Shown: one piece after another, positions 1,691-46,833 of the stretch
Layout of the letters: every line of letters begins with the position of its first letter
Numbering within the stretch: the stretch's first letter is position 1
DNA from: Mizuhopecten yessoensis
Taxonomy: Eukaryota
NCBI RefSeq assembly: GCF_002113885.1
Contig: NW_018407093.1
Location: forward strand, 515,296 to 579,295
Reading direction: 5' to 3'
Length of the DNA: 64,000 nucleotides
Made by a program: the position numbers and the translations under genes
The notes under the pieces: model-generated
Told to the model about the DNA's origin: nothing
Seen by the model: the letters and a program-made list of their open reading frames with translations, nothing else
Database searches by the model: none

Positions 1691-3604
1691 TGATTTTTAG
1701 GGGACCAGTGCTTTCTTTCAATGTTAAATGATATGCTTTCGACCATTTTGGAGGGAAATGTTACTCTTTGTTTATCGGGTGGTAATTGACAAGCTACAAT
1801 TTAGCCACAATATAGCCCAAATAACAGCTCTGTACCTCGCTAATGGGGCAAGCTCGGGCCAGTGGTCAGCGTTCCACGGTGTGGAGAACATGCCAGGGAT
1901 CATCTGCATTCTAAAGAAATCAAGTCATTAGATAATAATTATATCAATGCTCCTTTGCCACTGTGAACATTCTAAGGAAATGGCAATAGTTGTATATTTA
2001 ATGCAATGTATATTTTACTCATCAATCTTTGCCAGTTCAATACCAAGTTTATCAGACAGGTATGGAGACGTTGATTTGTTTATAAGCTTGACCGCTATCA
2101 GGCCTACAAAGTCTCCCAGACCGGTATGAAGTTGTTGATTTGTTTATCATTCAGCTCTGACCATATCAGGCCTTCGGGCAAGAACTTAATCCTGTATTAC
2201 ATTACTCTTGTGTATTTAGACAAGATTCCTTGTGAATCGGAGTTTATATCTGAGTCTGGTCAATGTTTGTATTGATACTATCTTTGTACACCCATCAACA
2301 GCTTGTCTGTGAGCAGGATCACACCCCAGGAGTTGAGACTGGACATGTGGTTCAGGGCAGAGTAGTAATATAAGTGTTACAAAGGAAAGCAGGATCACAA
2401 TACCAGCCTGTCAAAGAGATAAACAAAGATAAATAATTCTATACACCTTTCCTGGTGACAGGGTTGTACATTGTGAAATAGGAAAAGAAAGCTGAACTTC
2501 ATCATAAAAGTCCTGTGACATATGTAACTTAAACTTTAGAAGAAGAAAAGATATTTATATATACCATAATTGTTCTGAACTTTGTCAATATATATTTTAT
2601 CTTAAAAAAATTGGTTGCATATTTGTTGATTTTGCAATGTCATTGTCACTTTTTATCAATATGCCGGGTAAGAAAATAGAGTAAGGTATCGGGTATCGTA
2701 TGTGGAAGTTCTCCCTTCAAGTGTACAACATACTTGTCAACTTTTTGAAATTTCCATGGGGGATTACGCATGCTCAAAATTAAAACATAAATAAAATGTA
2801 TGAATGTAACAACTCAGGGAAAATTTCCATTTTTAAACAGCATCTTTTGAGCTGTTCTTTCAGATGAAATCATCAGATCTTAGAAAATAGTGATAGTACA
2901 GCACTGGTTGGAAATGCTCAACTTTAGGGTCCAAAATCGGGAGTCTCCTCCAAAAAATGGAGAGTTCGCAAGTTTGAGTGTGGAGGTTAGGGTAGAATCC
3001 TGTACAATGTTATTTTAAAATAAAAATCATTTGATTGTTATATAAATTTCATATAAAATGGAAACTATTAAAGATCATTTAAGTTAAATTGAACAATTTT
3101 CATATATTTTGATAACATTCTACACAATTTATAAAGTCACATGATATGGACACGTAAGTTATAAGCGAGCAGAATCACTCATCAGTTTTAAAGCCTCAAG
3201 GACAATTGATTAAATCTTTCTATATTTATAGATATTCAGGATAATGGGACAAGCTTCCATCTCTCCCACCATTGTATATACAATCACTACCTGTAACTGG
3301 GTCATCCATCAGACACCTGTATTACCTGGATGGTGGGGATTCAATTAAGGTTTGATTGATGGTCAGTTTACAGCCCCAGCCAGGTGTCCTGGCACTGACA
3401 AATGACCAGTGCATTGATAAAATCTATTGTCAAACAATCAGCACATATTTGGCAAGTAGAGATGAGGTTTGATCAATATCATTTCCAAGTTCCACGAACA
3501 AAAGCAGTGCTAAATATAAACATGTTTAACAATGAATCAATTGTTTTAAAACATCTATATCAAAACATGTGTGTGCATGTGGACGGACTTGATTTACACT
3601 AATA

Positions 3605-4920
3605 GACAGACTGTGTCAATATATACTAGCAGACAGACTGTGTCAATACTAGCAGACAGACTGTGTCAATACTAGCAGACAGACTTGGTCAATACTAGCA
3701 GACAGACTGTCAATGCTAGCAGACAGACTGTGTCAATACTAGCAGACAGACTGTGTCTATACTAGCAGACAGACTGTGTCAATACTAGCAGACAGACTGT
3801 GTCAATACTAGCGGACAGACTGTGTCTATACTAGCAGACAAACTGTGTCAATACTAGCGGACAGACTGTGTCTATACTAGCAGACAGAATGTGTCAATAC
3901 TAGCAGACAGACTTGGTCAATACTAGCAGACAGACTGTGTCAATATTAGCAGACAGACTGTGTCAATACTAGCAGACAGACTGTGTCAATACTAGCAGAC
4001 AAACTTGGTCAATGCTAGCAGACAGACTGTGTCAATACTAGCAGACAGACTGTGTCAATACTAGCAAACAGACTGTGTCAATACTAGCAGACCAACTTGA
4101 TTAATACTAGCAAACCAACTTGATCAATACTAGCAAACAAACTTGATCAATGCTAGCAGACCAACTTGATCAATGCTAGCAGACAAACTTGATCAATACT
4201 AGCAAACAAACTTGATCAATACTAGCAGACAAACTTGGTCAATGCTATCAGCCCAACTTGGTCAGTACTAGCAGACAGACTTGATCAATGCTAGCAGACC
4301 AATTTGATCAATGCTATCAGCCCAACTTGATCAATACTAGCAGACAAACTTGATCAATACTAGCAGACAAACTTGGTAAATGCTATCAGCCCAACTTGGT
4401 CAGTACTAGCACACAGACTTGATCACTGCTAGCAGACCAACTTGATCAATACTAGCAAACAAACTTGATCAATGCTTGCAGACCAACTTGATCAATGCTA
4501 GCAGACCAACTTGATCAATACTAGCAAACAAACTTGATCAATGCTTGCAGACCAACTTGATCAATGCTAGCAGACCAACTTGATCAATACTAGCAGACAA
4601 ACTTGATCAATGCTAGCAGACAAACTTGGTCAATGCTTTCAGACCAATAGACCAACTTTATCAATGCTAGCAGACCAATAGACCAACTTCATCAAGCTAG
4701 CAGACCAACTTAATCAATCCTAGCAGACAAACTTGGTCAATGCTATCAGACCAACTTGGTCAGTACTAGCAGACATACTTGGTCAATGTTAGCAGACCAA
4801 TTTGGTCAATACATTACTAGCAGACAATCGTGGTCAATACTAGCAGACCAACTTGGTCAATGATTGCAGACACACTTGGTCAATATTAGTTGACAAACTT
4901 TATCAACACTACAGGACAAT
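3605..4920. repeat. 23-bp minisatellite (TACTAGCAGACAGACTGTGTCAA grading to ...AGACCAACTTGATCAA)
   Basis: Period measured directly; two variant domains. Confidence 0.95.
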
Positions 4921-5885: not shown

Positions 5886-7838
5886 GTTTGTGATGACCTG
5901 TCTATTGGCTCCTGTTGTGTGTGTGTAGATATTCGGGAATGTGTCATAATCGTAGAGGAGAAATAAGCCCTGTGTTGTATGACTTTCTTTGATTAAAGTC
6001 CAGAATGAATCTGATTGTGTTTACAGAGTCTGTTCTTCACTGTCCTGTGTGATAGACTGTGGCTTACAAATAAAGGAGGTTTCTAGGTCGGAGACCCCAG
6101 TGTTGACAGATACAATATTAATATTCTCCTCACAGTTATATATGGGTTTTCTGACCATGTTTTTCTGGCTCAATTAAAGGTCAAAAGTGGAATTCATAAT
6201 TATAAATATTTTGTAGGTGAAACTTTGAGGCCAAAATAATTGAATAAGGAATGCTGTGAGCAGGTTATTATAGAGAATTTCTACCAAAATAGTCAAATAT
6301 ATATATATATATATTGATTTGGAATGCACTTTCAGTATATTTGGAATTGTTTTGTTAAAAACTCAGAAATGGTACTTAAGGTGTATCTTTGACATGCACA
6401 TGAAAGAATGGGAAATGTTCCAAACAAATATGTCTCGATAATATTTGAAATTGAAAAAATATGAAAAGCTTAGGATATAATAATAATAGCTTGCTAATTT
6501 GATATTTGGACATTTTATGCCTCTTAGATTCATAGAGTTCTACATTTGATGCATTTTCGTTATTTTAATTTCAACTGTCTATAGTGTAATTACAAACTTA
6601 CATTATGAAATCATATTTCAAATTAACACATTTCTGAATTCTGTGTATTAATAAGAAGGCAGTGGTGTAATGTGACTACATATGACTTCATTGCTAATGG
6701 CTTGTCGAGGAGCCAGACGGGTTTCTATGACGATCGAGAGGTTTATCTGATATTGAAGTCCCATTATAACCAGACACCATTATGTAACATCAATATTCAC
6801 CAAACCTGTCCGTCCACATTTCTCCTACACTTAACTTATAGTGAAATGGGACCGGTCACATTGTACGATTTCATCTCAAATATTCAAATTTTGATGTGAG
6901 AGGAGGCGGATTTGACATATTGTATGTTTACAAAACACATATATTCCTGCTCTGGTGATTTGGATAACCATGTTGTTGGAACAATTCCTGAAGCGCTTTG
7001 GTAATGTTGTTTAATATAAGAGCATTGTTTGTTATTGAGAAATATTACGTGTCTGACAATATATAGGTTCATTTTGTCATGGTAACTTTGTTTCTGTTTT
7101 AATTGTTTTGAGTTTGAAAGATAATCATAATTGAATTGTGAAAAAAAGTCAAACAAAATAACTATCTCAATGGTTATAGTGTTTTTGTCTGTGATATTTG
7201 GAAAGATGATGATATTTTTATTGGTAAAAAACAATTTATATTAGAAACCAGCTGACTGGTACTGACAGCCTGTGTAAATTGTAATAAGAAAAACTAGAAA
7301 TTAGTACTGTCAACCATATATGTCCATTTCAGTGTTTGAAATACAAATTGTAAGACATTCATTTATATTTCACCACTTGATATCAATTCCATCAGTTTTG
7401 AAGGGGAAATGTATATTTCATGAAGTTTGACATCATTTCATTATCAACTGATGACATCACAACTGGTCGTATCACAGGAATTCATACCCAGAAATACGAG
7501 GTAGTATGTGATAGATATATAGTGTATTTATCTCAACACTCCTGTTATGTGAGATAATTGGTTACAGTATAATTTTGCTGTAAGGTAAAATCACAAATTC
7601 AATAAAACTGCACACTTCTATGGTCAGGTAATACTACATAGGTTATTTTCTCTAAACTTCAAACTTGTTATAAATTAAAATGTGAAAATACAACACTGCA
7701 CAAAATCACAGGTGACTTTTACAGCGCTGTCTGCAGTATAGGTGAATAATATATGTTTCCTGAATGAGCTTGATCTATTGAGGTTGTTTTTGTCTGTTGT
7801 TAGTGTTGCTGTAACTGATTGTGTTTTGTCTGTTTCAG

Positions 7839-10800
7839 ACCTGGAGGACAATCCGGAATACATGCAGATGATGTCCAATGCGGCCAGCAATCTCCAGCGC
7901 CGGTCATCATCAGGCTCTGACCGGTCCTATCCTATCGGACCTACGGAAAGGGGTCAGTCTCTTCGGTCGGTCAGTCGGTCACCCAAAGACTCCATTTCTG
8001 AAAGTAATGAGCAGGATGATTTTATGAACAAAGTCTGCAAATTTGAATTAATATCGCGTGGGAAGAACTCCCCCACTGCCAAGTCACCCACCAATAAATT
8101 TTTCTCGCCAGAACACGAACGATACGATCCGTCTCTTTATTCTCAACAGAGTATTTCGTCATCCACGACCAGATCTCCACTGGCTAGGCAGTATATACCA
8201 GAACCGGGAAAGACGGCGAATACGCCTACTTATCCTGCAAAGTCAATGGAACGTCAGAAATCTCGACCAGGACAGAGTCCAGGGACATACTCCGGAGAGA
8301 AGGTGTTTAGTAAAGAGACCGCTACAACACGTGTGTCACTCAGTGTCTTACGGGGAAATACAGGAACAGGAAACAACGAACGTGTTGTCAGTACAGGAAG
8401 TAACAGTTCCGGCTCACTGACCAGCGTCAGTAGTGTTAGTGGTGGTGCTACTTTAAGTTGGAACTCAAATTCTGACTCGTCAAAATCTGACGAATCTTTG
8501 TCCAGTAGCAAGACACTACACACTTCATCATCCGGTAGTACAACTCCCCGAACTGACCAATCAGTGACCAGGATGCGAACACCTGATTTAGCTAGCACTA
8601 AGGTTGTCATGGCGACAACTGCAGAGTCTCTAGCAGAAAGCATTATGAATGGTGATCTCCTTTCATCTATTAGTCCAACGAAGAAGCCAGAGTTTGACCC
8701 TGGCAGTGAAAGTAATCGGAACACATTTGATGGAATGGACTTTGATTTTAATGAACTGACTTCAAGTCAACAAGACTTGTCCATCAAACACCAGGAAATG
8801 GTCTCCGAGCGGAAAAAGGAACAGGAAATGGAACGTCTGGAAAAACAACGATTAGAGGAAATATTAAATATGTGTGCAGAGTATGAGAAACAAATTGAAG
8901 ATGAAAAAGGTAGTGAAAAAAGTTCTGTTTCTAGTGTGCTTGGTCAAACGAAACCTCCCCTGCTGAAACCCTGGTCCATGCAGGAGTTTTTGGAAAACAA
9001 CAACAAATCAGTGGAATCTGTTGAGGATAGGGATGGAAGCTTGACGCCCACCTCACCGTCAAACCTACCAGGGCAGACCACTCCAACAGCAAATGGAACA
9101 TTCAGCTACAAATCGCCTCCAAATTTCCTGGGGTCAAACAACAGCCCCTCTGTCTATCAGGGACAGATATCTCAATCACCAGGACTAAACGTAGAATATG
9201 GGTCGTATGAGAATATGGTAGTTAGCTCTCCTGACAACCGTAGGGATGGATCGCCAGCCATGCAGAGTCCATCCTACTTACAAAGACCAAGTCTACCGCC
9301 CATGGCAGAATATGAAGGTCAAAAAATCAGAGGTCAGGGTTCACCAAGGCAACAGGAAGTAAGAGTCAATGGGTTCTCACAAAATCAAAATATGCAAAAT
9401 TTACATCCTGATGTTAGAGAATTTATCACTTCTTCGCCCAAAACTATCTTGGACGAAACAAAACCTTCTTCATCAAGTCCAAAATATGTTGCAGAGGAAA
9501 ACAAAATAATTTCACCTTCCCACAAGTTAATGGTAGACAAACAACAGGGGGTAATCAGGTCTCCTAAATCAAGTGAAAACAGTGGGGAGTTTATATACTC
9601 TTTAGCCAAGTCCGTCTCCGTAACTGATCACATGGGCGCCAACATGGCGGGCGGTGGACAGCAGTCTAAATCTACCAAAAACTCACAGAACAATACCACA
9701 CAGGAGATGAACTGGCAGTATTCTAACTCACCTGCTAATTCTCAACGCCAAATTATAGAACCACCGGCGGGATTTGAGGATGCCCTACCGGCTGGTTCCA
9801 GGGAGGGTAAGCAAAAAGACTCCACCCCTGAAATCCACCAGTTAATTTCTGAATCAGCTGCAACCTTAAATCGCAAGGAGAGAGAACAACAGATAGTTCA
9901 AGCTTCTCAGAAACCCGGACTGTTACAACAAAATCAGGATGACGTTGAACGTAGACCTGTACAGCGACCAAACCAATTATTGAACTTGAACGACCAGGAT
10001 GGAACTAGTTCACTTGACAGAAAAGACAAGTCTGAGTTCCGTAGCTCAATGTCAAAGATCAAAACCAATGGTTCACTCACAATGTTGTCATCGCCAAACA
10101 ATCCCCACAAGGACATGGTGGGATTTCAAGTCCGGCGATGTAACTCCAATTCTTCAAACTCTGAGGAAGAATCGTCCGGTGGGAACTCTGAGGACACGGG
10201 AACGATAAAACGCCGCCCCATCATAGGTGGGGAGCCACTGAGAAGGAGTTTCATTGAAGAGAGAAATCGCAATAAAATTTCTCCTGAGGAGCCTCTCAAA
10301 AGTCCACATTTCTCTCCGATCATGGGCAGCAGGAGCCCGAAGATTGGACGCAGGATGATGCGGTATGAAGATCTACAAAATCAAAGTGTGAAAGTGTCGA
10401 GCAGTGAAAGTCTGTCTTCCTCTAGTAAAAAATCAGACGACAACTCCAGTGTTAAAAGTCGTAAATCAAACAGCAAAGAAAACGTGTCTTCCAAGTTGGA
10501 TGTTGTTCACACACAAAAGTCTGGCCAAGAGGATGTGTCTGTTAACAGCCTAAATAACCATGTGTCTCTCAACCAATCTATAGATTCGGCAGAAGTAGAA
10601 AAATCTGTCCGAATGGAACGGTGTGAAATGTATCTTCGCACTTCAGGAGGTCAAGGTCATTTGTCGGATCATTCTAATGAATACACTAGTAATATCCCTG
10701 GGCCTGGCCCGTTCCCTAGGGATATAGGGGAGGGGGTTTACGAAAATGTGCCATTTTATCGTAACAAGGAGTCTGGGATTATAACCCCGGATTATACTTC

Positions 10801-11038
10801 ATCTGTGTCTTCCAAAAGGATTAATACTACTAGTGATACTTATCACTCTAAAGTGAGTTCCATTGATTCTAATGTCGTGTCTTCCATTCGGAACTCCTCG
10901 GGATCTAATAGCAGCAGTAAAAAATCGGATGAAACTCCCGTAAACAGTGATACGGAGCATATACTAACGCAGGCCCACGACCGGGCATCCTCCAGTGGGG
11001 TGGAGTCATCTAGTGAATGTAGCTTCAACTTTACAGAG
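7839..11038 (+). CDS. PHLDB: PHLDB-like giant exon (3200 nt): Ser/Pro-rich low-complexity region with a short conserved coiled coil
   Basis: Acceptor ttttgtctgtttcAG at 7837-7838 (phase 1, [G]AC CTG GAG). Donor GAG|gtaagc at 11039 (phase 0). Lies within the 1119-aa ORF and contains RKKEQEMERLEKQRLEEILNMCAEYEKQ. Confidence 0.9.
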
Positions 11039-11285
11039 GTAAGCTGGCACATCTTTTATGTCACTACACCAAATCATCGAAATTTATCTACTTTACAATA
11101 ATTTCAAAATATTGAATATCAAGTTGTATTAATTACAATTGTTGGCCTTACCCAATACACAGTGTGTTGGTGGATGGTGTTGGAGGGAACAGGATTGATC
11201 TTGAGAAAACTTGATGGTTGAGCAGCGGAGGTGTTCTATTCATGTCCAATCGATCAGAGAGTCAAATGCTGGTCATCTTATTGAA

Positions 11286-11376
11286 TTAACTCATTCACCC
11301 CTGAAATTTCATAGTGGACTATTCCAACCATTGAATTGGAAGAGTTAAAATGTGTATTCAGGTGTCAATGAGTTAA
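11286..11376. mobile_element. ~83-bp TTAA-flanked MITE (piggyBac-like), copy 1
   Basis: TTAA-CTCATTCACCCCTGAA...TTCAGGtGTcAATGAG-TTAA terminal inverted repeats; four copies in window. Confidence 0.75.
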
Positions 11377-11454
11377 AATCAATAAACAATAGTTTAGATT
11401 TTAGGGCTAATTCATGATACTTATATTCAATGGTTAAGGTCACTTCAGTAAAAG

Positions 11455-11582
11455 TAACTGGTGGATTTCAGGGGTGGAGTCTTTTTGCTTACCCTCCCTG
11501 GAACCAGCCGGTAGGGCATCCTCAAATCCCGCCGGTGGTTCTATAATTTGGCGTTGAGAATTAGCAGGTGAATTAGAATACT
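11455..11582 (-). repeat. Inverted duplicate of coding segment 9717-9844
   Basis: Reverse complement matches at 127 of 128 positions by manual alignment. Confidence 0.95.
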
Positions 11583-11841
11583 AATTCTAATTCACAAAAT
11601 GTAGTTAAATGGACTTCCTTGACACATATTTCCAACCACTACAGGGTGGTCTGCTTTAGGTCAAAGTTCAGTGACAAACATTGGGACGAAAGGTTTTGAT
11701 TGAAAACATTTTCATGTTACAATTATCTTTGTAAGGTGGTTTGCAAGGTCAAGGTCACAAAGTCTGGTACAAAAGTTAAATGTAGGGGATTTTTATAAAT
11801 AAGATCTAAACACATTTTTTCATTGTTTTTCCTTTCATTGG

Positions 11842-11932
11842 TTAACTCATTCACCCCTGAAGACACGTTTGAACTCTTCCAATTCAAATGTTGGAATAGT
11901 TCATTTTTAAATTTCAGGGGTGAATGAGTTAA
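11842..11932. mobile_element. TTAA-flanked MITE, copy 2 (opposite orientation to copy 1)
   Basis: Perfect TIR CTCATTCACCCCTGAA with TTAA on both sides; interior is the reverse complement of copy 1. Confidence 0.8.
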
Positions 11933-12585
11933 TAGCATATAACATAATCAGGTGTGGAGATTTTTTCCCCGATTTCTGAAAAAAACGTTGATCTGGTTAC
12001 ATTTTCTATTGTAAGATATAGTTTCTATCATTGATCAAGAGTCCCTAATAACTGTTCATCAATTTATATATCTTAGAACAAATATGCAGAATATTACATT
12101 GAAATCAGAGGAAGTAAATAATTAATTCTTTAGAATTTGATTATTTAGAGTAATAAGATAAAAAATACATCTTTTCAATTTCTTTTTTTTTTTATGTATA
12201 AATTTAAGTGTATTTCAAAATTTTCGGAGAAATTTTCCCCATGAAATAAAATACCAATTAGTTATGACCCTAGACCAGTATCATAGACCACTGTTATAAA
12301 AGTCTGTGAAAGATATCAAGGATGTGATCAACTTTCTCAACTGTTCATTTTTGGGGATGTTTTGACATTTATCTGCGAAAATGGAATGTTTCTGTCAAAA
12401 AAGTCATCAAAACTTGAAGAAGGTCATATGAAAACTGTTGCATGCAGTTCAAGGGAGACAACTCTGATAGCCTTAACCCAACACTGTGCTTAGCAGTCAC
12501 AAGGCGTTGTTGTAGGAAGGCCTTCCAGATAGTGTTTATGGTGCCGAGCAGCTGTAGTGTACATTAACGTTATTATTGGGCGCCA

Positions 12586-14839
12586 CCTTGTCTTCAAATA
12601 AAATGGACTTAATTCCCTTATTACATAACACAGAATAATTCATATCTGGTGAATTATTTTTTCGAATTTTGACAATATTTACAAATTTTATATGAAAACC
12701 CAATGATGAGGCAGTATAAAACCCTCTATGATAATTTTCCATTTATACCTCAATATATCTAATGTCACCATGACAACCAAATTATAACCCAATTTATAAT
12801 TATCTCTCATGTGACTGTAAGATACTGTTTTTAAACTTTGAGTCAAACTTGTTAAGCATAATCTGATGTGCGATATGATGTTTACTGTATGACAAGAGAC
12901 ACTTGTAGCCTGTCACCATTATGAGATGTACATACACAATGGTATAATCACATTTTATTTTATTCCTAAAACCAAATTTGTACTTTGCAGCTAACTGTTT
13001 CGTGGACCAATCCAAAAACAGCCAAGCATTCAGTCTGCACTGTATTGAGTTAAATGAGGTATAATGAAGCCAAAAACAGTTTAAACTGATTTGCCGAAAA
13101 ATGAAAAAGCAAAACACCAGACATCTCTGTTCCATCAGTGATCTCCGAGGTTCGAGTTAAGTACAAGCCGTACGTTGTTCCATCAGTGATCTCTGAGGTT
13201 CGAGTAAGTACAGACCGTACGTTGTTCCATCAGTGCTCTCTGAGGTTCGAGTAAGTACGGGCCGTACGTTGTTCCATCAGTGATCTCGGAGGTTCGAGTA
13301 AGTACAGGCCATTCGTTGTTCCATCAGTGATCTCTGTGGTTCGAGTAAGTACAGGCCGTACGTAGTTCCATCAGTGATCTCTGAGTTTCGAGTAAGTACA
13401 GGCCATACGTTGTTCCATCAGTGACCGCTGAGGTTCGAGTAAGTACAGACCGTACGTTGTTCCATCAGTGCTCTCTGAGGTTCGAGTAAGTACAGGCCAT
13501 ACGTTGTTCCATCAGTGATCTCCGAGGTTCGAGCTAGTACAGGCCATACGTTGTTCCATCAGTGATCTCTGAGGTTCGAGTAAGGAAAGGCCGTACGTTG
13601 TTCCATCAGGGATCTCCGAGGTTCGAGTTAGTACAGGCCATACGTTGTTACATCAGTGATCTCTGAGGTTCAATTGAAGAAATAAATTGTGGGCTGGGAC
13701 TAATGGAACCTTCAGAAGTTCAGGGAGAAATGTTAATACATAGATATAAAGAAATCTCTATCTTCAGTAAAATACGTTGTTCCATCAGTGCTCTCCGAGG
13801 TTCGAGCTAGTACGGGCCATTCGTTGTTCCATCAGTGATCCCTGAGGTTCGAGTAAGTACAGGTCATACGTTGTTCCATCAGTGATCACCGAGGTTCGAG
13901 TAAGCACAGGCCGTACGTTGTTCCATCAGTGATCTCCGAGGTTCGAGTTAAGTACAAGCCGTACGTTGTTCCATCAGTGATCTCTGAGGTTCGATTGAAG
14001 AAATAAATTGTGGGCTGGGACTAATGGAACCTTCAGAAGTTCAGGGAGAAATGTTAATACATAGATATAAAGAAATCTCTATCTTCAGTAAACGATTGAA
14101 GTTGGCAATTAAGTTTCCGTTAACTGGAGGACACAATGACTTTCCTAATGTATCTTAGTTGCAAAAACTTGCTGAACAGAATAATCAGACGTCATTGTAG
14201 TAAGTTGTCACAGCTAGTAGTAAATAGCTGGCTAGAATTTGATCTAGTAGTGTAAAAGTGATAAATAAGTGATTTTCTTTCATCAGAAAAAAAATTATAA
14301 TGACTAAACATTTATTTTTTATTTTTCGGCAAATCAGTTTAAACTGTTTATGGCTTCATTATACCTCATTTAACTCAAAACAGTGCAGACTGAATGCTTG
14401 GCTGTTTTTGGATTGGTCCACGAAATAATTAGCTGCAAAATACAAATTTGGTTTTAGATATAAAACAAACCGTGACTATACCATTGTATATATGTACATC
14501 TCATAATGGTGACAGGCTACAAGTGTCTCTTGTCATACAGTAAACATCATATCGCACATCAGATTATGCTTAACAAGTTTGACTCAAAGTTTAAAAACAG
14601 TATCTTACAGTCACATGAGAGATAATTATAAATTGGGTTATAATTTGGTTGTCATGGTGACATTAGAAATATTGAGGTATAAATGGAAAATTATCATAGA
14701 GGGTTTTATACTGCCTCATCTTTGGGTTTTCATATAAAATTTGTAAATATTGTCAAAATTCGAAAAAATAATTCACCAGATATGAATTATTCTGGGTTAT
14801 GTAATAAAGGAATTAAGTCCATTTTATTTGAAGACAAGG
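12586..14839. repeat. ~525-bp inverted repeat (arms 12586-13108 and ~14315-14839)
   Basis: Near-identical ORF MENYHRGFY... appears on both strands; arms align by eye with scattered substitutions. Confidence 0.93.
13128..13995. repeat. 47-bp minisatellite (CGTACGTTGTTCCATCAGTGATCTCTGAGGTTCGAGTAAGTACAGGC), interrupted by a ~100-bp block
   Basis: Period measured directly; interruption at ~13674-13771. Confidence 0.93.
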
Positions 14840-14993
14840 CCAAGATGTTAGGCTATACAATACAACAAAAGTTAATGGCTATCCAAGGACAGTTGTTTAA
14901 GTAGTAATTACATCCATTAAATACACAGAGTTAATTCTCAATCGTTAACAAACTTCAGTGATATTATTTCACAAGTCTGTGAAATAATAAGTT

Positions 14994-15310
14994 ATTGAAG
15001 AAATAAATTGTGGGCTGGGACTAATGGAACCTTCAGAAGTTCAGGGAGAAATGTTAATACATAAATATAAAGAAATCTCTATCTTCAGTAAACGATTGAA
15101 GTTGGCAAGTTACCGTTAACTGGAGGACACAATGACTTTCCTAATGTATCTTAGTTGCAAAAACTTGCTGAACAGAATAATCAGACGTCATTGTAGTAAG
15201 TTGTCACAGCTAGTAGTAAATAGCTGGCTAGAATTTGATCTAGTAGTGTAAAAGTGATAAATAGGTGATTTTCTTTCATCAGAAAAAAATTTATAATGAC
15301 TAAACATTTT
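14994..15310 (+). repeat. ~320-bp direct duplicate of 13994-14313 (partial third copy at 13674-13771)
   Basis: ATTGAAGAAATAAATTGTGGGCTGGGAC...GACTAAACATTT recurs. Confidence 0.9.
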
Positions 15311-15574
15311 TGTGTTTCTCAATCCATTTCCTAGGGCCACAACATTGTGAAGATTTCACTCATACCTGTGACAAATACCATATAAACGCTTTTCTCTTTT
15401 ATCTTGACCTGATGAAGATAAATTAGTCAACACAATATTTAAATTTACATCCAGCCAAGCCTGAAAACAACACAGGCTCATGTAAATAAGTACATTTTAC
15501 AACACAACACAGCAAATATCAACGCAATCTTAAATGGCTCTGCTGAATAAAGAATTATTAGAATGCTACACATG

Positions 15575-16535: not shown

Positions 16536-16764
16536 GTTTGTGTCCATTACTCCTAACTTATACTGTCAGTATATATTTACCTGTCCCATTAGTGGGTCAT
16601 TTGTGCAAGCATACTTCAGTGTACCGAGACATTTTTGCTGCAGATACATTTTTTAACTTTTTCGTCTTACTTTTATCATAACAGCAAATATTAATAAACA
16701 TATAAGTAAATGTAGTAATCAGATGTAAAGGCCGAAGTTTACACTATAGTTGTCATGGATTTTA

Positions 16765-17533
16765 TCATTGTAGATGTAGGGAGTTTACCATTGTAGATGT
16801 AGAGAGTTTACCATTGTAAATGTAGGGAGTTTATACCATTATAGATGTAGGGAGTTTACCATTATAGATGTAGTGATTTTACCATTGTAGATGTAGGGAG
16901 TTACCATTATAGATGTAGGGAGTTTACCATTGTGGATGTAGGGAGTTTACCATTATAGATGTTGGGAGTTTACCATTGTAGATGTAGGGAGTTTACCGTT
17001 GTAGATGTAGAGAGTTTACCGCTGTAGATGTAGGGAGTTTACCATTGTAGATGTAGGGAGTTTACCGTTGTAGATGTAGGGAGTTTACCATTGTAGATGT
17101 AGAGAGTTTACCACTGTAAATGTAGGGAGTTTACCATTGGAGTTAACCATTGTAGATGTAGGGAGTTTACCGTTGTAGATATAGGGAGTTTACCGTTGTA
17201 GATGTAGGGAGTTTACCGCTGTAGATGTAGGGAGTTTACCGCTGTAGATGTAGGGAGTTTACCATTGTAGATGTAGAGAGTTTACCGTTGTAAATGTAGG
17301 GAGTTTACCATTGGAGATGTAGGGAGTTTACCATTATAGATGTAGGGAGTTTACCATTGTAGATGTAGGGAGTTTACCATTATAGATGTAGGGAGTTTAC
17401 CATTGTAGATGTAGAGAGTTTACCATTGGAGATAACCATTGTAGATGTAGGGAGTTTACCGTTGTAGATGTAGGGAGTTTACCGCTGTAGATGTAGGAAG
17501 TTTACCATTTTAGATGTAGGGAGTTTACCATTG
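16765..17533. repeat. 23-bp minisatellite (TTACCATTGTAGATGTAGGGAGT)
   Basis: Period measured directly. Confidence 0.95.
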
Positions 17534-18084
17534 AAGGGTAAAAGTTTGACTGGGCTGATACAGTATAGTAAGATAATCATGATCCAAACCAAAGTGTAAG
17601 GTAACCTTTGTTTGTACTCACTTCTTTTACCCTTCAGGATCATGTCCTTAAGTAAAACACAGTAATTAGTGTCACTATCAGTTAAAATTTACACAATCTG
17701 CATTACAACTGGTGTATGATTTCTGCAGTGAAACCTGTACATAAAGACCAGCAAAAAACCCAATGATGACAGTTATCACTCTGTGGTTAGGGGTTGTGTG
17801 TAATTACAGCACATCTAGATTCCTATCTAAGCCGACCCGTGTCTAATAGAGATCCCTTTCTATCAGCTTTATTTGGTTTCAATAATTCCTTTTACTTCAA
17901 CCCTGCCAGTATGGACACTGTCTAGTCTGGAGACTGTCTAGTCTGGACACTCTCTACTCTGGACACTCTCTACCCTGGACACTTTCTACTCTGAAGACTG
18001 ACAATGTTATCTAAAACAACCTGTTCTTAAAGAAAACTACAGTGGAAATCTTAGTGTTTTGCCTGCAGTGGGACCGGGATCCGT

Positions 18085-24175: not shown

Positions 24176-24195
24176 TACATGTTGATATTTTACAG

Positions 24196-26640: not shown

Positions 26641-27819
26641 TACACCTGTACATTAAACACCTGTACTTTAGCCCCAGTTTACCTTTATTTCCTACAGATG
26701 AGAATACAGGTGGGTACACACACATCTTCATATAATCTATATGTAGACTTGCTCAAGTTCAGACACCTTCAGACAGTGTAACATCCTTTGTTAAAAAATC
26801 GGCTATTTTCTACACAGAATGTCACTTTAAATAAACCATTGATCCCAAGGAGTTTTTCCTGTATATCATACTTAAGTAATCAAATCATGTTTCTGTTACT
26901 TCATGTATTTTATCCTGTTTTTAGGAGAGAAAAAAATCAAAACACTTCCAGTGGAAAATGAACTTGTGCAAGTCTACGTAACCTGTGTGTAAACATGGTA
27001 GTTGTAGAATGTGACACTGGCCCCTTCACTTCAGAGTAGACTGTTCCATTACAGAGAATGGGGCATTCCACTTCTGGATCACTGGGGTCAGGGTGGAAAT
27101 GTGCATCTTCCAGCATCCTTTATAACCAACTGTATCCGCACATATTGTACTTCTTTTTTTAAGTTTGTTTGTATTTGTTTTTAATTGGACCTATTTTTTT
27201 TTTACTTTTTAGTGTAAATAGTTTAATTGGTGTGTTGTATTTTTTTAGACAAGTCAAAACCGATTTCAGATAAACCATGATTAAAGAGCACTTCATCACT
27301 TGTCTCCAAAACCTCCCAGACTACACATACAAACCTGTCAGCAAGTCACCGCAAACTTTCTAATATAAGCACAGCACACACAGGGGGGGGGGGCACCTGA
27401 GCATTATTACTGATGTGTGTGAGAGGGGGCGGGGTTATTGTCAAATATATCATTAATTCATTAAGGAGACAATTTCTTACAAAAACAAATGCTGAATTAC
27501 ATTGAACATGAAGAAAATATTGAAACTGATGAGAGTGTGATATGTTTCTGTTCTTGTGTTTGAGGGTATTTGGTCCCATTAGTAAAATCTCTGTGCACAG
27601 TAGCACTAGTATCGTACAGAACTCTCCCTGTTTCTGGTCTATACTAACTGGGTGTCTGGTTTCTGAACAACATGGACACAATAACATCAGGTTTTACCTC
27701 GCTATCTACTTGACTATTGGATCATTTGTGTCAATACATTTTGTAATTGAAAAATAATAAAACTATTAAAAAGACATGCATTTTACAACATAAACAACAC
27801 ATAAATTGTCAGAATATTG

Positions 27820-28566
27820 ATTGAACAGTACAGTGCACACAACATCCAACAGTACAGTGTACACAGCATTAAACAGTACAATGTACACAACATTGAACAG
27901 TACAGTATATACAACATTGAACAGTACAGTGTACATAACATTGAACAGTACAATGTACACAACATTGAACATTACAATGTACACAACATCCAACAGTACA
28001 GTGTATACAACATTGAACAGTACAGTGTACATAACATCCAACAGTACAGTGAACACAACCTCCAACAGTACAGTGTACACAACATCCAACAGTACAGTGT
28101 ACACAACATTGAACAGTAAATAGTATACAACATTGAACAGTACAGTATACACAACATTGAACAGTACAGTGTACATAACATCCAACAGTACAGTGTACAC
28201 AACATCCAACAGTACAGTGTATACAACATTGAACAGTACAGTGTACACAACATTGAACAGTACAGTGTACACAACATTGAACAGTACAGTGTACACAACA
28301 TTGAACAGTACAGTGTACATGACATCCAACAGTACAGTGTACACAACATTGAACAGTACAATGTACACGACATCCAACAGTAAATAGTACACAACATTGA
28401 ACAGTACAGTGTACACACCATTGAAATGTACAGTGTACACAACATTGAACAGTGCAGTGTACACAACATTGAACAGTACAGTGTACACAACATTGAACAG
28501 TACAGTGTATGCAACATTGAACAGTACAGTGTACACAACATTGAACAGTACAGTGTACACAACATT
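27820..28566. repeat. 24-bp minisatellite (ACAACATTGAACAGTACAGTGTAC)
   Basis: About 31 copies; explains the 8-aa periodic ORFs in several frames. Confidence 0.96.
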
Positions 28567-29591
28567 TATTTTATTGTTATGTATATACTGTTTAATGTAT
28601 GCATGTTTTTTAAAAAGTCAGAAATATATGTTTGTAAAACATATTCATACAAAACTTGATCATTGAAGTCATCGGACAGCTGTAATATTATCACTGAGCC
28701 AACCGGTGACCCACCTTGTTTGTAAGAGAATTTCCTGTAAAATCACAGGATATAGACTCAATTACATTCAATACCTTTTTAGAGTGAAACTTACTTTGGG
28801 TTTGATTTTATTTATGAACTGAAATGTGACACAAAGTGGACTTTTACTAGGAAAGAAGTCACAAATCAGATTGAGGTGTAGTGCTGTATCTGTCTTGTTT
28901 ATTTCTTTTAAATGGTTGTGTTTAATGCCACTATTTCTTCTTCTTTGAAATAATTGCAATACTTCATGAAATGTATGGATATGCATGGCCGAGTGAATGT
29001 TTGTGGAATGTTTGTGGAATGTTGAGCTGTTGACGGAATGTATAATAAACCATCTAATATATATGTGTCGATGTTGTAAATGGGTATTGTAGACACGCGT
29101 GGTCGTGTATATTCTATAAATAGGTCCCAGCATGGTCTGTAAATATATCAAAGTTTGTAGTGTGATTGAGGACAGTATTTAATAATGAGGTGTGTAAACA
29201 CTGACAGTTGGACAGACTTTCACTACATATACTATAAACATGTATATCTGATCAGAATTCAGAGTGAAGTACTGAACATACTTTATTCATACATACATAT
29301 AGTATAACAACGGGAGGAGATCCTCGGACCACAAAACTCCAGACGGATACCCTAGTTAATTGGGCTACATTGTACTGTGTCACCTGAACTAGTCACCTGG
29401 ACTAGTCACCTGGCCATGTCCCCCTCCCCCCAACCTCCGAAGACAACACTATTTACAACCCAGGTAGTTAAGGTGCCCTCTTATTAAGGGTTATGGGTTG
29501 GTCAAAGGGCACCACCATAACAGGAGGAAAGGAAAAATGTACTGCTAGATCAGAGTAACCTCTTAACTCTAGAGGGACACTCTAACCAATT

Positions 29592-33691: not shown

Positions 33692-33811
33692 CACAAGAAA
33701 CAGTTAGCTGGAGTGATGAAGAAAATTCAGGAAATATCACAATTCTTGTCTGTTCCCGTAAACGATGAAATATTAGATCAGCGAGGACGATCGTCGGATA
33801 ATGAGACGGAG
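33692..33811 (+). CDS. PHLDB: PHLDB-like exon (HKKQLAGVMKKIQEISQFLSVPVNDE...DNETE)
   Basis: tactttacAG acceptor, GAG|gtacat donor, 120 nt, phase 0-0. Confidence 0.8.
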
Positions 33812-33814
33812 GTA

Positions 33815-34742
33815 CATCACCACACAGGCCTTACACAAATAACCTCACCACACAGGCCTTACATACAAATAACCTCACCACACAGGCTTTACATACAAAT
33901 AATCTCAAATACAGGCCTTACATACAAATAATCTCACCACATAGGCCTTACATACAAATAACTTCACCACACAGGCCTTACATACAAATAACCTCACCAC
34001 ACAGGCTTTACATACAAATAACCTCACCTAACAGACTTTACATACAAATAACCTCACCACACAGGCTTTACATACAAATAACCTCACCACACAGGCCTTA
34101 CATACAAATAACCTCACCACACAGGCCTTACATACAAATAACCTCACCACACAGGCCTTACATACAAATAACCTCACCACACAGGCCTTACATACAAATA
34201 ACCTCACCACACAGGCCTTACATACAAATAACCTCACCACACAGGCCTTACATACAAATAACCTCACCACACAGGCCTTACATACAAATAACCTCACCAC
34301 ACAGGCCTTACATACAAATAACCTCACCACACAGGCCTTACATACAAATAACCTCACCACACAGGCCTTACATACAAATAACCTCACCACACAGGCCTTA
34401 CATACAAATAATCTCACCACACAGGCCTTACATACAAATAACCTCACCACACAGGCCTTACATACAAATAACCTCACCACACAGGCCTTACATACAAATA
34501 ATCTCACCACACAGGCCTTACATACAAATAACCTCACCACACAGGCCTTACATACAAATAATTTCACCACACAGGCCTTACATACAAATAACCTCACCAC
34601 ATAGGCCTTGCATACAAATAACCTCACCACATAGGCCTAACATACAAATAACCTCACCACACAGGCTTTACATACAAATAACCTCACCACACAGGCCTTA
34701 CATACAAATAACCTCACCACACAGGCCTTACATACAAATAAC
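33815..34742. repeat. 30-bp minisatellite (ACCTCACCACACAGGCCTTACATACAAATA)
   Basis: About 31 highly homogeneous copies starting a few nt after the donor at 33812. Confidence 0.97.
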
Positions 34743-35851
34743 TTTGATGACAATGGCATACTCAATTTTTATTGATTTAATTATAACAAGGAAATTGATT
34801 AACTTCCGCCTTTTGGTTTTGAGTTATTTCCCTTGTTATAAAATGGTATTTTTAGATTTTGTTTTAAATTATTTCATTTATTAATCTTTAATACTTCATA
34901 GATCTCTGTAAATAACTTTTACTCATTACTTGTTATTTCCATATGTTTTGATATTTTTAACATTTGAAAACAGATCTGTTGGTAATTAAATTTAAGGATT
35001 AAACTCTTTTCTAACCATGAACTACATGTACAGTAGTTCTCATATTGTGACAGTTTCCATTGCATTTTAAGTTTAGTAACAAAAGCAGCGTTTTCCGAAC
35101 AAACTGCTGTATACAACACTTCATTCTATGTACTTTACAAGGATTTTAGGACTGATAAATTGGGTTGGTTTCCTTTTAAATTAAGGTCATATTTTCCTCT
35201 ATTTTATAGAAAAATTAGCCTGAAATTTTTACAACAAATTCACATAACTACCAGTTTAATATTTTGTTTATCTGTTTGAGTTGTTTGGCATTGTATTATT
35301 GAGTTATAAATTAATAGAGGAAAAAGTGTAAAAAAACCCACCGCTATTCAATAATAGATTTGCTCATTTAAGCTGCAAATGTTTGTTACCCCTGATTTTC
35401 AAAAAGGCAGTTTTTGTTTCATTAAGCTAGATTTATCGGTTTTTACTTGAAATTTTCCCAAACAGAGTACAATTTCGAAAAACTTTCTAAATGAAAATAT
35501 CACTACTGCACAAAAATCTGGATCTTTGGAAAATTGAAGGGAGACAACTCTTCTAGGTTTAAATTTCAGTGGTAGTGCTGAGAAACCAAGATGAGTTGTA
35601 ATGTATGCATTGGATATTGGAATTGTTTATGTACTATATAATCGTCCCTGTATTTTGTACTTGCAGGAGGATGTTTTTTTATGTATTTTATAAAAATGAA
35701 AGAGTTTTTTTCTGTTTCTGTAAAATGTCTTATCACAATGAACTGTTGCTGAAGTATATAATTTAATAATTAATATTTTTATATGATAATACTTTTTTTG
35801 CTGATTTGTCAGAAAAAACATATCTGCAGCAACTTTTTGTTTATTTTTCAG

Positions 35852-40611: not shown

Positions 40612-41319
40612 ATTTTGTAAAAGATATATATACCACTGGAACTTTTTCTTGCTGCATGGTTGGTTTTATTTCAGCGGAGTTGAATAAGAGACGGAGAAGA
40701 GGGACAACTCAAATTGTTTTCAGATTTATAAACAATATATCCATATTCTGCCATATTTGTAAAGTATACAAACTTAGGTATAAGGATTTAACTGGTATGT
40801 GTACGGCAGTGATAATCCTTTATTCTGACAACTGATGTACTCCCAGTAAAGGTCCGACGCACAAACACAAATGTCATATCGTCAGTGCATGAAACGAAAC
40901 ATGCCATTATACTTACGACCGGATATATTATTTCATGATTTATGAGGTGATGTTTCACAAATGCATCTCAACCTGTCGCAATGCACCGCATATATGAATG
41001 CCTTGTAATAAAGTTATGTGAGGGTGATCTCTGGAGAGTGACACTGACTAGAGAAAGGAGGATACTGTGAGTTTCTGTACCCGGATGCATTTGGTGTAAA
41101 TTCTGGTCCAATTATGCATGAAAACAAAATTTCTGTTTATGCTATTTATACTTGTTTTGTATCCGGTACATATGGATGAGCTGGGTGTCAAAAAGGGTCA
41201 GACTATATTGCAAAAAATGAAAAATACCAGTTTTTGTGAATATATCAAGATTATCATTGTAATCATGCAGTTATGGAAATTTCTGCTAATTTCAAAATGC
41301 ACTCAAAGTTTTATTTTGA

Positions 41320-44026: not shown

Positions 44027-44584
44027 AACTGTGTGACTGATAAAATCAATCATTTTACTATGACAAGCCACTCATCTGTAAACCATTACTGTCAATCCTA
44101 TTATCTCCATTCCATTTGTGTTACTACGACTACCAGTCACTTAATTCCACCAGTCGCTTTTCTGTTTTATTATTTCCGCTATTTAAGCAAAAATTTGCGA
44201 GTGAGAGAAAGTTGATGTATAATTGATTTGTTTTTGGTTTGTTGGACTCAGCTGAACTTGGTCAGTTTACATGTGGTAAATATTCTACAGATTCCCAACT
44301 TGTAGATTTTTGCAAATACAAATAATAGTATTTATGTTTCTGGTGTACAAGTTAGAGATTCAGTTTTCTGATTATGGTTTATTAGAGGCAGCTCTGTTTT
44401 TGTAATGATTCTGTCCATAATTGGGAATGTTGTTATGATATGTTACTCGCCATCATATTGAGGGGGGTATGTATTTTTATCTGTAAATGAGTGGGTTTTG
44501 TGAGATGGATCTGTCACTCAGTATACTGTGTACGTTATCTACTTCACTTTTATATAATATTACATAAGGCTTTACACTTCTTCA

Positions 44585-44850: not shown

Positions 44851-45214
44851 TGTCATCCTAACCAATCAATGAACCTCCGTCAGAAAAGTGTTTGAGTTTT
44901 TTTGCCCCTTAGTCTAATACCAACAGAGCTGGACATGCCAATCGGATTTCAGGTTGCTAATCGTCTGAAGTCGTTCATTTGTAATTAAGGCTAAGGCTGA
45001 TTAACGAGGCAGTGCAGACAGCTTAGTGGACAATGGCAAGAGTGCCTGTGTAGAGTTCAAGTAGCTTCTCACCACCAGCAGACTCATCACTCACTGTATC
45101 TCTGTCTCGTTAGAGTTCTTCTATTCAAGAAGTATTTGGTTAATATTCTGATAATATCCTTCAAATTGCGTTACTAAGATGAAGCATAGCATATTATGAC
45201 TATGATAATTATGA

Positions 45215-45790
45215 TACTGACCTTGGGGCAGGCTCTGATCATATTCACCCTGACTTTAGGCCGGGCTGTGATCATATTCACCCTGACTTTAGACTGGGCT
45301 GTGATCATATTCACCCTGACTTTAGGCTGGGCTCTGATCATATTCACCCTGACTTTAGGCCTGGCTCTGATCATATTCACCATGACTTAAGGCCGGGCTC
45401 TGATCATATTCACCTTGACTTTAGGCCGGGCTCTGATCATATTCACCCTGACTTTAGGCCTGGCTCTGATCATATTCATATTGACCTTGAGCCGGGGTCT
45501 TATCATATACACATTGACCTTGATCCAGGCTCTGATCATATTAATCTTTACCTTTGGTTAGGCTCTGATCATATTCACCTTGACCTTGAGCCATGCTCTG
45601 ATCATATTCACTTTGACCTTGAGCCAGGCTCTGGTCATATTCACATTGAACATGAGCCAGGCTCTGATCATATTCACCTTGACCTTGAGCCAGGCTCTCA
45701 TCATATTCACCTTGACCTTGGCTCTGATCATCTTCACCTTGACCTTGAGTCAGGCTCTGATCATATTCACCTTGACCTTGGTTTGACCTG
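45215..45790. repeat. 33-bp minisatellite (GGCTCTGATCATATTCACCYTGACYTTRRGCCR); decayed relatives at ~46280-46490
   Basis: 11-aa periodic ORFs; visible units. Confidence 0.9.
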
Positions 45791-46742: not shown

Positions 46743-46833
46743 TTAACTCATTCACCTCTGAAATTTCATAATGAACTATTCCAACCTTTGAATTGGAAGA
46801 GTTTAAATGTGCTTTCAGGGGTGAATGAGTTAA
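46743..46833. mobile_element. TTAA-flanked MITE, copy 3
   Basis: Same TIRs and interior; sits at the end of a SINE-like fragment. Confidence 0.8.

What the first reader, a model, noticed from the sequence alone, without database searches (positions are those of the whole stretch)
9717..11596. Near-perfect antisense copy of coding sequence in the downstream intron (exon-intron dsRNA, ECS-like)
Seen: intronic 11455-11582 is the reverse complement of exonic 9717-9844 at 127/128 nt (C9727 opposite A11572), starting about 420 nt after the donor. It is followed by ATTCTAATTCAC, a fold-back of its own end. Known: exon pairing with a downstream intronic complement is the geometry of ADAR editing-complementary sequences, and fold-back junctions mark template-switch repair. 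Inference: a recent templated insertion created a 128-bp pre-mRNA duplex that loops out the 5' splice site. It could cause A-to-I recoding of about 42 codons, altered splicing or endo-siRNA, i.e. a de novo editing substrate made without a transposon.
Basis: partly seen in the sequence, partly recalled or inferred. Interest (0 to 1): 0.8.

Follow-up and report, generated by a model that had tools for sequence, protein, structure and literature searches.

The report
Backwards exon copy in scallop intron
A Yesso scallop gene carries, about 400 bases into an intron, a backwards copy of 128 bases of the preceding exon, apparently left by a DNA-copying slip; several animals share it and it could make the RNA pair with itself, but nothing yet shows an effect.

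Summary
Window 11455-11582 is the reverse complement of exon 9717-9844 at 127/128 bases, followed by a 12-base fold-back. The gene is the PHLDB1/2-like gene LOC110453881 of Mizuhopecten yessoensis. The exon spans 7839-11038 and the intron is about 13 kb.

The patch is not an assembly artefact. Contigs from two independent DNA samples cross both junctions, and two further runs hold the right junction. It is single-copy and has no transposon ends.

Its anatomy fits a three-step template switch: an inverted copy, a self-hairpin that re-copies the one mismatched base, and a return at a 4-base TCAC repeat. The patch varies at two sites with the same alleles as the exon. This implies at least one gene-conversion-like exchange between the arms.

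The predicted pre-mRNA fold pairs the whole 128-132 bp duplex. The function is unsupported:
- An RNA-derived contig shows no A>G change in the exon arm at consensus level.
- That contig ends at the normal donor, as splicing there predicts.
- Published work reports no endo-siRNA pathway in molluscs.
- Raw reads were not available, so low-level editing is untested.

The scan has noted similar antisense exon patches at other loci of this genome (for example CDC45). Verdict: a real, young templated insertion and a plausible but unproven dsRNA substrate.

The parts
7839..11038 (+). Large coding exon (3.2 kb) of the PHLDB1/2-like (LL5-like) gene LOC110453881. The acceptor cag ends at 7838 and the donor GTAAGC starts at 11039.
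   Evidence: The ORF is. It is 99% identical to M. yessoensis protein P0001. tblastn and blastp maps are. The next exon of that isoform is at 24181, so the intron is about 13.1 kb.
9717..9844 (+). Source arm: 128 nt of coding sequence (residues QYSNSPANSQRQIIEPPAGFEDALPAGSREGKQKDSTPEIHQL). Weaker homology possibly extends to 9853.
   Evidence: The protein segment is conserved in Ylistrum, Pecten and Argopecten orthologues, so the exon is the original and the intron arm is the copy.
11444..11454 (+). Ragged left junction. A 5-nt match and a 3-nt match to exon 9853-9846 are interrupted by one extra base and a 2-for-1 replacement.
   Evidence: Gapped alignment, letters. Read as error-prone or abortive start of synthesis, or as later mutation. 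It could also be chance.
11455..11582 (+). Inverted (antisense) copy of exon 9717-9844, 127/128 identical. A11572 lies opposite C9727.
   Evidence: Contigs of runs X5 and X10 cross its left edge (11333-11510). Contigs of X5, X10, X12 and X15 cross its right edge (starting at 11542 and ending at 11857-11865).
11584..11595 (+). Second templated tract: a 12-nt fold-back of 11568-11579 around the loop ACTA (11580-11583). It re-copies the mismatched base (T11591 pairs with A11572).
   Evidence: It equals exon sense 9720-9731 except for the same T in place of C.
11592..11595 (+). TCAC, identical to the last four bases of the left flank (11440-11443). Candidate microhomology by which the nascent strand returned to its original template, giving a pure 152-nt insertion (11444-11595).
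   Evidence: This is inference, because no empty-site allele was seen.
11286..11376 (.). Context only: a 91-nt palindromic, TTAA-bounded MITE copy. A second copy lies at 11842-11932 and others at 46743-46833 and 61103-61193.
   Evidence: Summed word depth is 1e5-1e6 against about 10-20 for the flanks. Each copy is complete with its own flanks, so they do not delimit the patch.

Best explanation
The patch is a scar of template switching during DNA synthesis, either at a broken end or at a stalled fork. It is most likely neutral.

Inferred sequence of events:
1. A growing + strand left its template after ...GGTCAC (11443).
2. It snapped back onto + strand DNA 1.6 kb upstream, either its own strand or the parental one. 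There it copied about 128-137 nt of the exon backwards (9853/9844 down to 9717).
3. It dissociated 10 nt after a misincorporation, or after copying a now unseen synonymous donor allele.
4. It folded on its own end and copied 12 nt.
5. It re-annealed through the new 3' TCAC at the place it had left and carried on. The net result is a 152-nt insertion.

The insertion then spread in Mizuhopecten yessoensis. The two arms have since exchanged variants at least once, by gene conversion or arm homogenisation.

In the pre-mRNA the arms can form a 128-bp perfect duplex that loops out the 5' splice site. This duplex must persist while the 13-kb intron is transcribed, so some promiscuous ADAR editing is plausible. 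No effect on the mRNA is shown. The most likely status is a neutral or slightly deleterious scar.

Shown: the anatomy, presence in independent animals, single-copy status, shared polymorphism and the predicted fold. Inferred: the order of switches, the enzyme and neutrality.
For: Anatomy: the inverted copy, the 12-nt fold-back and the repeated TCAC are. The fold-back carries the complement of the mismatched base (A11572/T11591). The mismatch therefore existed when the fold-back was made.

The exon is the source: the arm encodes a segment conserved in three other scallop genera.

Real and widespread: X5 (study P2) and X10 (study P3) have contigs 11333-11510 and 11542-11865 across both junctions at single-copy depth. 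X12 and X15 have the right-junction contig. Contig ends at 9757, 9789, 11510 and 11542 are exactly those predicted for 31-mer graphs of a two-copy repeat.

No transposon: the flanks have depth of about 7-23, the MITEs are separate complete copies, and there is no Rfam match.

Arm exchange: the patch in X5 and X10 has 11480G and 11530T. These mirror the exon variants 9819C (X15) and 9769A (X12, X15, X5, X10). The window's patch and exon both have the other alleles. Orthologues show that 9819C (Ala) is ancestral.

Literature:
- Snap-back synthesis gives reverse-complement inserts, iterated priming and errors near the abort point. About 2-3% of templates lie more than 1 kb away (PMC5068794).
- Template switches create RNA hairpins de novo (PMC8794818, PMC5453318).

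No RNA effect seen: X15's exon contig 9728-11039 has no A>G change in the arm and ends at the donor.
Against: - At 152 nt with a template 1.6 kb away, this is far larger and more distant than typical polymerase-theta inserts (under 25 bp, mostly within 10-20 bp; PMC5068794) or short template-switch mutations.
- No empty-site allele or outgroup sequence was obtained. A pure insertion and the TCAC return are therefore inferred, and 4 nt of identity is weak evidence.
- Runs X12 and X15, which share a haplotype, have no contig over 11444-11541, so the left junction is unconfirmed in that haplotype.
- The conversion argument assumes that the window's own letters at 11480 and 11530 are correctly assembled.
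- Neutrality is not demonstrated. Contigs cannot reveal editing below roughly half of the molecules.
Confidence: 0.72

Rival explanations
1. The patch is a working ADAR substrate, a de novo editing-complementary sequence. The exon-intron duplex is edited in a substantial share of transcripts, recoding up to 27 of 38 adenosines in the arm or changing splicing, and this affects the PHLDB-like protein.
For: - The minimum-free-energy fold of 9500-11800 pairs all 132 positions, and the duplex energy is about -262 kcal/mol.
- The acceptor lies 13 kb downstream, so the duplex coexists with the unspliced intron for the whole transcription time.
- M. yessoensis has four ADAR-like gene models (PMC6651903).
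- The arm has 38 A, of which 27 would recode and 31 lack the disfavoured 5' G.
- The patch is at high frequency.
Against: - The RNA-like run X15 shows no A>G change in 9717-9848. Its only two A>G differences (11008 and 11082) are also in DNA runs, so they are SNPs.
- X15's exon contig ends at the normal donor, as splicing there predicts.
- No conservation could be shown.
- The same intron holds a far longer hairpin, with arms of about 525 nt at 12586-14839, so this duplex is not special as dsRNA.
Confidence: 0.15
2. A mobile element captured the exon piece and inserted it (transduplication by a MITE, Helitron or Pack-type element, or a composite of the two flanking MITEs).
For: Two copies of an extremely abundant TTAA-bounded 91-nt MITE lie 67 nt upstream and 246 nt downstream of the insert. 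This shows that cut-and-paste elements have been active here.
Against: - Each MITE copy is complete with its own TTAA ends, and unrelated copies elsewhere in the window have different flanks.
- The DNA between the MITEs is single-copy by depth.
- The patch has no terminal repeats and no poly-A. Its ends are a ragged junction and a self-hairpin, which transposition does not produce.
- The source lies only 1.6 kb away in the same gene.
Confidence: 0.04
3. The patch is an assembly or sequencing artefact (a chimeric fold-back read or a mis-joined de Bruijn path).
For: The published assembly of this species is highly fragmented (PMC12479628). Inverted repeats of this size tangle short-read graphs.
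Against: Independent samples from two other studies (X5 and X10) give contigs across both junctions at normal depth, with their own SNPs.
Confidence: 0.01

Closest known systems
Template-switch mutations that create hairpins (Loytynoja & Goldman 2017, PMC5453318; Monttinen & Loytynoja 2022, PMC8794818; de novo miRNAs, bioRxiv 10.1101/2023.04.19.537475)
   Same: A single event writes a reverse-complement copy of nearby sequence and instantly creates a perfect stem. The polymerase returns to the original template. The arms can later be homogenised.
   Different: Those events are short (tens of bases) with source and target very close together. Here the insert is 152 nt, copied from 1.6 kb away, with an extra self-hairpin step. 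One arm is protein-coding exon and the other is intron.
Polymerase-theta snap-back templated insertions at double-strand breaks (Kent et al. 2016, PMC4912351; van Schendel et al. 2016, PMC5068794)
   Same: Reverse-complement orientation, iterated priming and dissociation, an error close to the abort point, and minimal microhomology at the joins.
   Different: Typical inserts are under 25 bp and are templated within 10-20 bp of the break. Only 2-3% come from more than 1 kb away. The enzyme cannot be identified from sequence, and a replication-fork switch (FoSTeS/MMBIR type) fits equally well.
Intronic editing-complementary sequences of ADAR targets (for example GluA2 Q/R and R/G sites; Gabra-3 intronic inducer, PMC3479170)
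   Same: The geometry matches: a downstream intronic complement pairs with exon sequence and must act before splicing.
   Different: Known examples are imperfect, conserved duplexes that direct site-selective editing, and that editing has been demonstrated. This duplex is perfect, young and unconserved as far as can be told, and no editing was seen.
Inverted repeat pairs such as Alu-Alu in primate transcripts (promiscuous hyper-editing; from general knowledge)
   Same: A long, near-perfect intramolecular duplex with a loop of 1-2 kb is the classic substrate for non-selective A-to-I editing.
   Different: Those arms are transposon copies in non-coding RNA. Here one arm is coding, and no transposon supplied it.
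Other antisense exon patches noted by this scan in the same genome (s1-509071 CDC45; s1-529824; s1-519487; s1-545951)
   Same: These are unique patches copied backwards from a nearby exon into an intron of the same gene. The one that was followed up was also judged a young repair or replication scar.
   Different: They lie in different genes and have different sizes. They are AI notes that I could not re-check, and only one was followed up.

Membership tests
ADAR editing-complementary sequence (ECS) | An intronic sequence pairs with the exon to form dsRNA in the pre-mRNA. | tested here: met
   The minimum-free-energy structure of 9500-11800 contains all 132 arm pairs, and the duplex energy is about -262 kcal/mol. 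This is a prediction only.
ADAR editing-complementary sequence (ECS) | A-to-I editing (A>G in RNA but not in DNA) within the paired exon. | tested here: inconclusive
   The RNA-like contig of X15 has no A>G change in 9717-9848. Contigs hide anything below the majority allele, and raw reads were not available.
ADAR editing-complementary sequence (ECS) | Evolutionary conservation of the complement. | not testable with these tools
   Orthologous loci could not be fetched. Three proteins were not on record and one gene range was too long.
ADAR editing-complementary sequence (ECS) | The host has ADAR enzymes. | not tested
   From the literature only: four ADAR-like gene models are reported in M. 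yessoensis (PMC6651903).
Templated insertion / template-switch mutation | The insert is identical to a nearby sequence of the same molecule. | tested here: met
   127/128 identity to the exon 1.6 kb upstream.
Templated insertion / template-switch mutation | Reverse-complement orientation (snap-back or strand switch). | tested here: met
Templated insertion / template-switch mutation | Several consecutive switches, with microhomology and errors at the joins. | tested here: met
   There is a ragged left junction (11444-11454), a mismatch 10 nt before the switch, a 12-nt self-hairpin, and TCAC repeated at the departure point and at the insert end.
Templated insertion / template-switch mutation | Typical scale: insert under about 25-30 bp, with the template within tens of bp. 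| tested here: not met
   The insert is 152 nt and the template is 1.6 kb away. This makes it an outlier of the class, comparable to the 2-3% of long-range cases in PMC5068794.
Templated insertion / template-switch mutation | An ancestral empty site showing what was replaced. | not testable with these tools
   No empty allele appeared in the four runs laid.
Transposon-mediated gene-fragment capture | The captured piece lies inside an element with terminal repeats and target-site duplication, and is present in several copies. | tested here: not met
   The patch and flanks are single-copy by depth. The MITE copies are separate complete units.

The most novel reading that the evidence does not exclude
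The patch is a naturally occurring, newly born editing-complementary sequence. On this reading it gives detectable clustered A-to-I editing of the PHLDB-like mRNA, with levels that differ between patch haplotypes. It would also be one of a recurrent class of long-range snap-back patches in scallop genes, of which the scan has noted about five. That class would be a transposon-free route by which exon-intron editing duplexes arise and are then kept matched to the exon by arm-to-arm conversion.
Probability: 0.25. Interest if true: 0.7.

Novelty: new member of a known kind. Interest (0 to 1): 0.45.

Why it matters
How intronic editing-complementary sequences first arise is poorly documented. Known examples are old and conserved, so their birth cannot be observed. 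This locus offers a dated-by-anatomy birth event:
- It is a perfect 128-bp exon-intron duplex made in one step without a transposon.
- It segregates as at least two patch haplotypes in a farmed species with many public samples.
- Editing, splicing and expression can therefore be compared by genotype.

The locus also shows a template switch about ten times longer, and about a hundred times more distant, than those usually catalogued. In addition, a 128-bp intronic copy has exchanged alleles with a coding exon, including an Asp/Ala site. If the locus proves inert, it is simply a well-resolved example of a repair or replication scar.

Tried and rejected
- Fetching the RefSeq locus and the Pecten, Ylistrum and Argopecten orthologous loci, to look for an empty site, failed. 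Three proteins are not on record and one gene range is too long.
- Pfam found no domain in the exon product. Rfam found nothing in 9000-15500.
- The idea that the two flanking MITEs delimit a composite element was rejected. They are complete independent copies, and the DNA between them is single-copy.
- I considered hairpin-opening P-nucleotides (from hAT- or RAG-type excision) for the 12-nt palindrome and rejected it, because a 4-nt non-palindromic loop separates the arms.
- I considered parallel mutation as the cause of the mirrored polymorphisms and rejected it. Two sites with the same alleles in both arms has a probability of roughly 1e-5.
- I considered that X15's left-flank contig stopping at 11443 marks a heterozygous empty site. 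This does not hold, because its right-junction contig runs unbroken from 11542 to 11857. The point remains unexplained.
- All sequencing runs offered were Logan contigs, so starts, ends, strand and low-level editing could not be read.
Exons were used by reference only.
Full report
**Observation.** Reading the region and searching it for repeats confirm the inverted pair 9717-9848 / 11451-11582: 132 nt, 98% complementary, 1602 nt apart. Base-by-base checking gives 127/128 for 9717-9844 against 11455-11582. The single mismatch is C9727 opposite A11572. Immediately after the copy, 11584-11595 is the exact reverse complement of 11568-11579, around the 4-nt loop ACTA. A gapped self-BLAST of the window extends weaker homology to 9853/11444: matches of 5 nt and 3 nt interrupted by small changes. 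The same search shows this is the only unique inverted pair in 64 kb, apart from one element with about 525-nt terminal inverted repeats.

**Gene context.** The + strand ORF 7742-11101 is 99% identical to the Mizuhopecten yessoensis protein LOC110453881 (P0001). Its named relatives are pleckstrin homology-like domain family B members 1 and 2, the LL5 proteins.
- Mapping P0001 on the window places a 3.2-kb exon at 7839-11038, with a cag acceptor and a GTAAGC donor.
- The next exon of that isoform is at 24181, so the intron holding the patch is about 13.1 kb.
- The core copy begins 416 nt after the donor.
- The arm encodes a segment conserved in Ylistrum, Pecten and Argopecten orthologues. The exon is therefore the source and the intronic arm is the copy.
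- Pfam finds no domain in this disordered exon.

**Is it real, and how widespread?** All runs offered were Logan contigs. I laid three DNA-like runs from two studies that are not the likely source sample (X5, X12, X10) and one RNA-like run (X15) on 9300-12300.
- X5 and X10 each have a contig 11333-11510 across the left junction and a contig 11542-11865 across the right junction. Both are at ordinary single-copy depth, and each run has its own SNPs elsewhere.
- X12 and X15 have the right-junction contig.
- Contig ends at 9757, 9789, 11510 and 11542 are exactly where a 31-mer graph must break for a two-copy repeat that differs at 9727/11572 and 9819/11480.
- The breaks at 9757 and 11542 occur in all four runs, so the 9727/11572 mismatch is shared by all of them.

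An assembly artefact is excluded. The insertion is common, possibly fixed, and is not a private new mutation. One gap remains. X12 and X15 share a haplotype and have nothing laid on 11444-11541, so the left junction is unconfirmed there. The tool warns that a hole proves nothing.

**Transposon?** A 91-nt palindromic, TTAA-bounded MITE lies at 11286-11376 and again at 11842-11932, with further copies at 46743 and 61103.
- Its summed word depth is 1e5-1e6, against roughly 10-20 for the neighbouring DNA.
- Each copy is complete with its own flanks, and the DNA between the two copies, patch included, is single-copy.
- The patch has no terminal repeats and no poly-A.

**How it was made (inferred from the anatomy).**
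- The left flank ends in ...GGTCAC (11438-11443), and the insert also ends in ...TCAC (11592-11595), followed by AAAATG.
- The simplest history is a pure 152-nt insertion (11444-11595) made by three switches.
  1. The growing + strand leaves its template after 11443.
  2. It primes on + strand DNA 1.6 kb behind and copies the exon backwards, from about 9853/9844 down to 9717.
  3. It lets go, folds on its own end and copies 12 nt.
  4. It re-anneals through its new 3' TCAC where it had left.
- The fold-back carries T11591, the complement of the 'mismatched' A11572. That base was therefore already in the nascent strand. It is either a misincorporation 10 nt before the abort point or a copy of a synonymous AAT donor allele that none of the four runs laid shows.
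- These features match polymerase-theta scars in C. elegans: error-prone start, error near the abort and iterated re-priming. In those scars, snap-back synthesis gives reverse-complement inserts. However, inserts are mostly under 25 bp and only 2-3% are templated from more than 1 kb away (PMC5068794).
- They equally fit replication-fork template switching, which is known to create perfect hairpins de novo (PMC5453318 and PMC8794818).
- Sequence alone cannot choose between break repair and fork switching. At 152 nt and 1.6 kb, this is an outlier of either class.

**Arm-to-arm exchange (a new point).** In X5 and X10 the patch reads G at 11480 and T at 11530. These are the mirror images of exon variants 9819 A>C (seen in X15) and 9769 G>A (seen in X12 and X15). 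The collapsed 91-nt contig shows that X5 and X10 carry 9769A too.
- In the window, both the patch and the exon carry the other alleles.
- Two sites sharing the same two alleles in both arms cannot reasonably be parallel mutation (roughly 1e-5). They imply at least one conversion or homogenisation tract of 51 nt or more that did not reach 9727.
- 9769 and 9727 are synonymous. 9819 changes Asp to Ala.
- Three other scallop genera have Ala at this position. The X5/X10 patch therefore preserves the ancestral state, while most sampled exons carry the derived Asp.
- Caveat: this relies on the window's own letters at 11480 and 11530. The probable source runs hold 97-98% of the sampled words, but I did not lay them.

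**What it could do in RNA.** ViennaRNA folding of 9500-11800 puts all 132 arm positions into one helix, with a duplex energy of about -262 kcal/mol. The donor sits in the 1.6-kb loop.
- The acceptor is 13 kb downstream, so every pre-mRNA must carry both arms for the minutes needed to transcribe the intron. This is a kinetic argument from general knowledge of transcription rates.
- The 128-nt arm (9717-9844) has 38 adenosines. 27 would recode if edited, and 31 lack the disfavoured 5' G.
- M. yessoensis has four ADAR-like gene models (PMC6651903).

Some promiscuous editing is therefore plausible. Against an appreciable effect:
- The RNA-like run X15 has exon depth of about 100 against intron depth of 7-31.
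- X15's exon contig stops at 11039, as expected at a used splice site.
- It shows no A>G change in the arm. Its two A>G differences elsewhere are also present in DNA runs.
- Contigs only report the majority letter, so editing below about half of the molecules is untested.
- The endo-siRNA suggestion is weakened by a survey of 32 molluscs, using M. yessoensis data among others, which found no dedicated siRNA pathway (PMC12479628).
- The same intron contains a much longer hairpin at 12586-14839, so this duplex is not the only dsRNA the transcript offers.

**Comparison and novelty.** In mechanism the patch belongs with templated insertions and template-switch mutations, as an unusually long and long-range example. 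In geometry it resembles an intronic editing-complementary sequence. However, the defining feature of that family, demonstrated editing, was inconclusive here, and conservation could not be tested. I therefore do not file it as an ECS. The scan's notebook lists four other notes of antisense exon pieces in nearby introns of this genome: CDC45, followed up and also judged a scar, and three first-reader notes. These hint at a recurrent process. They are unverified leads and I could not check them.

**Verdict.** The origin by template switching is well supported. 'Recent' needs softening to young but widespread. The functional reading is unproven and, at consensus level, unsupported. Interest is moderate. 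The locus would be a good natural test case for the birth of an editing duplex, and it shows exon-intron allele exchange, but at present it is most likely a neutral scar.

Noticed in passing
window 11286-11376, 11842-11932, 46743-46833, 61103-61193: A 91-nt palindromic MITE bounded by TTAA, which suggests a piggyBac-type target. Its terminal repeat begins CTCATTCACCCCTGAA. Its summed word depth in four runs is 1e5-1e6 against about 10-20 for unique DNA, so it is among the most abundant repeats of this genome. Each copy folds as a hairpin inside introns.
   Followed up: partly
window 12586-14839 (and direct repeat 13994-14313 / 14994-15309): A 2.25-kb element in the same intron, with terminal inverted repeats of about 525 nt (96-99% identical) enclosing a 47-nt tandem array. 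In the pre-mRNA it would form a far longer hairpin than the exon patch. It is probably a foldback-type transposon.
   Followed up: no
window 11444-11541, runs X12 and X15: X12 and X15 share a haplotype (the same SNPs at 9769, 11060, 11082, 11113, 11762, 12061, 12235 and 12269). Neither has a contig over the left two thirds of the patch. X15's left-flank contig stops exactly at 11443, the inferred insertion boundary. This could be a structural variant of the left junction, a coverage gap or a filter effect. It remains unexplained.
   Followed up: partly
window 9818-9820: There is an Asp/Ala polymorphism (GAC/GCC) in the PHLDB-like exon. Ala is the state in three other scallop genera, so the reference Asp is derived. 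The ancestral base survives in the intronic patch of some animals.
   Followed up: partly
window 11333-12300, run X15: In the RNA-like run, intron word depth is 26-31 before the patch, about 8 over 11542-11857 and about 20 after 11951. The DNA runs are flat across the same stretch. This could reflect heterozygosity, RNA processing or editing-diversified words. Contig means are too coarse to tell.
   Followed up: no
window, many places (for example 3549-4700, 16734-17570, 27704-28675, 33791-34870, 41214-44076, 45098-45823, 51177-51750): The introns of this gene are packed with minisatellites of 11-47-nt units, each several hundred to more than a thousand bases long.
   Followed up: no
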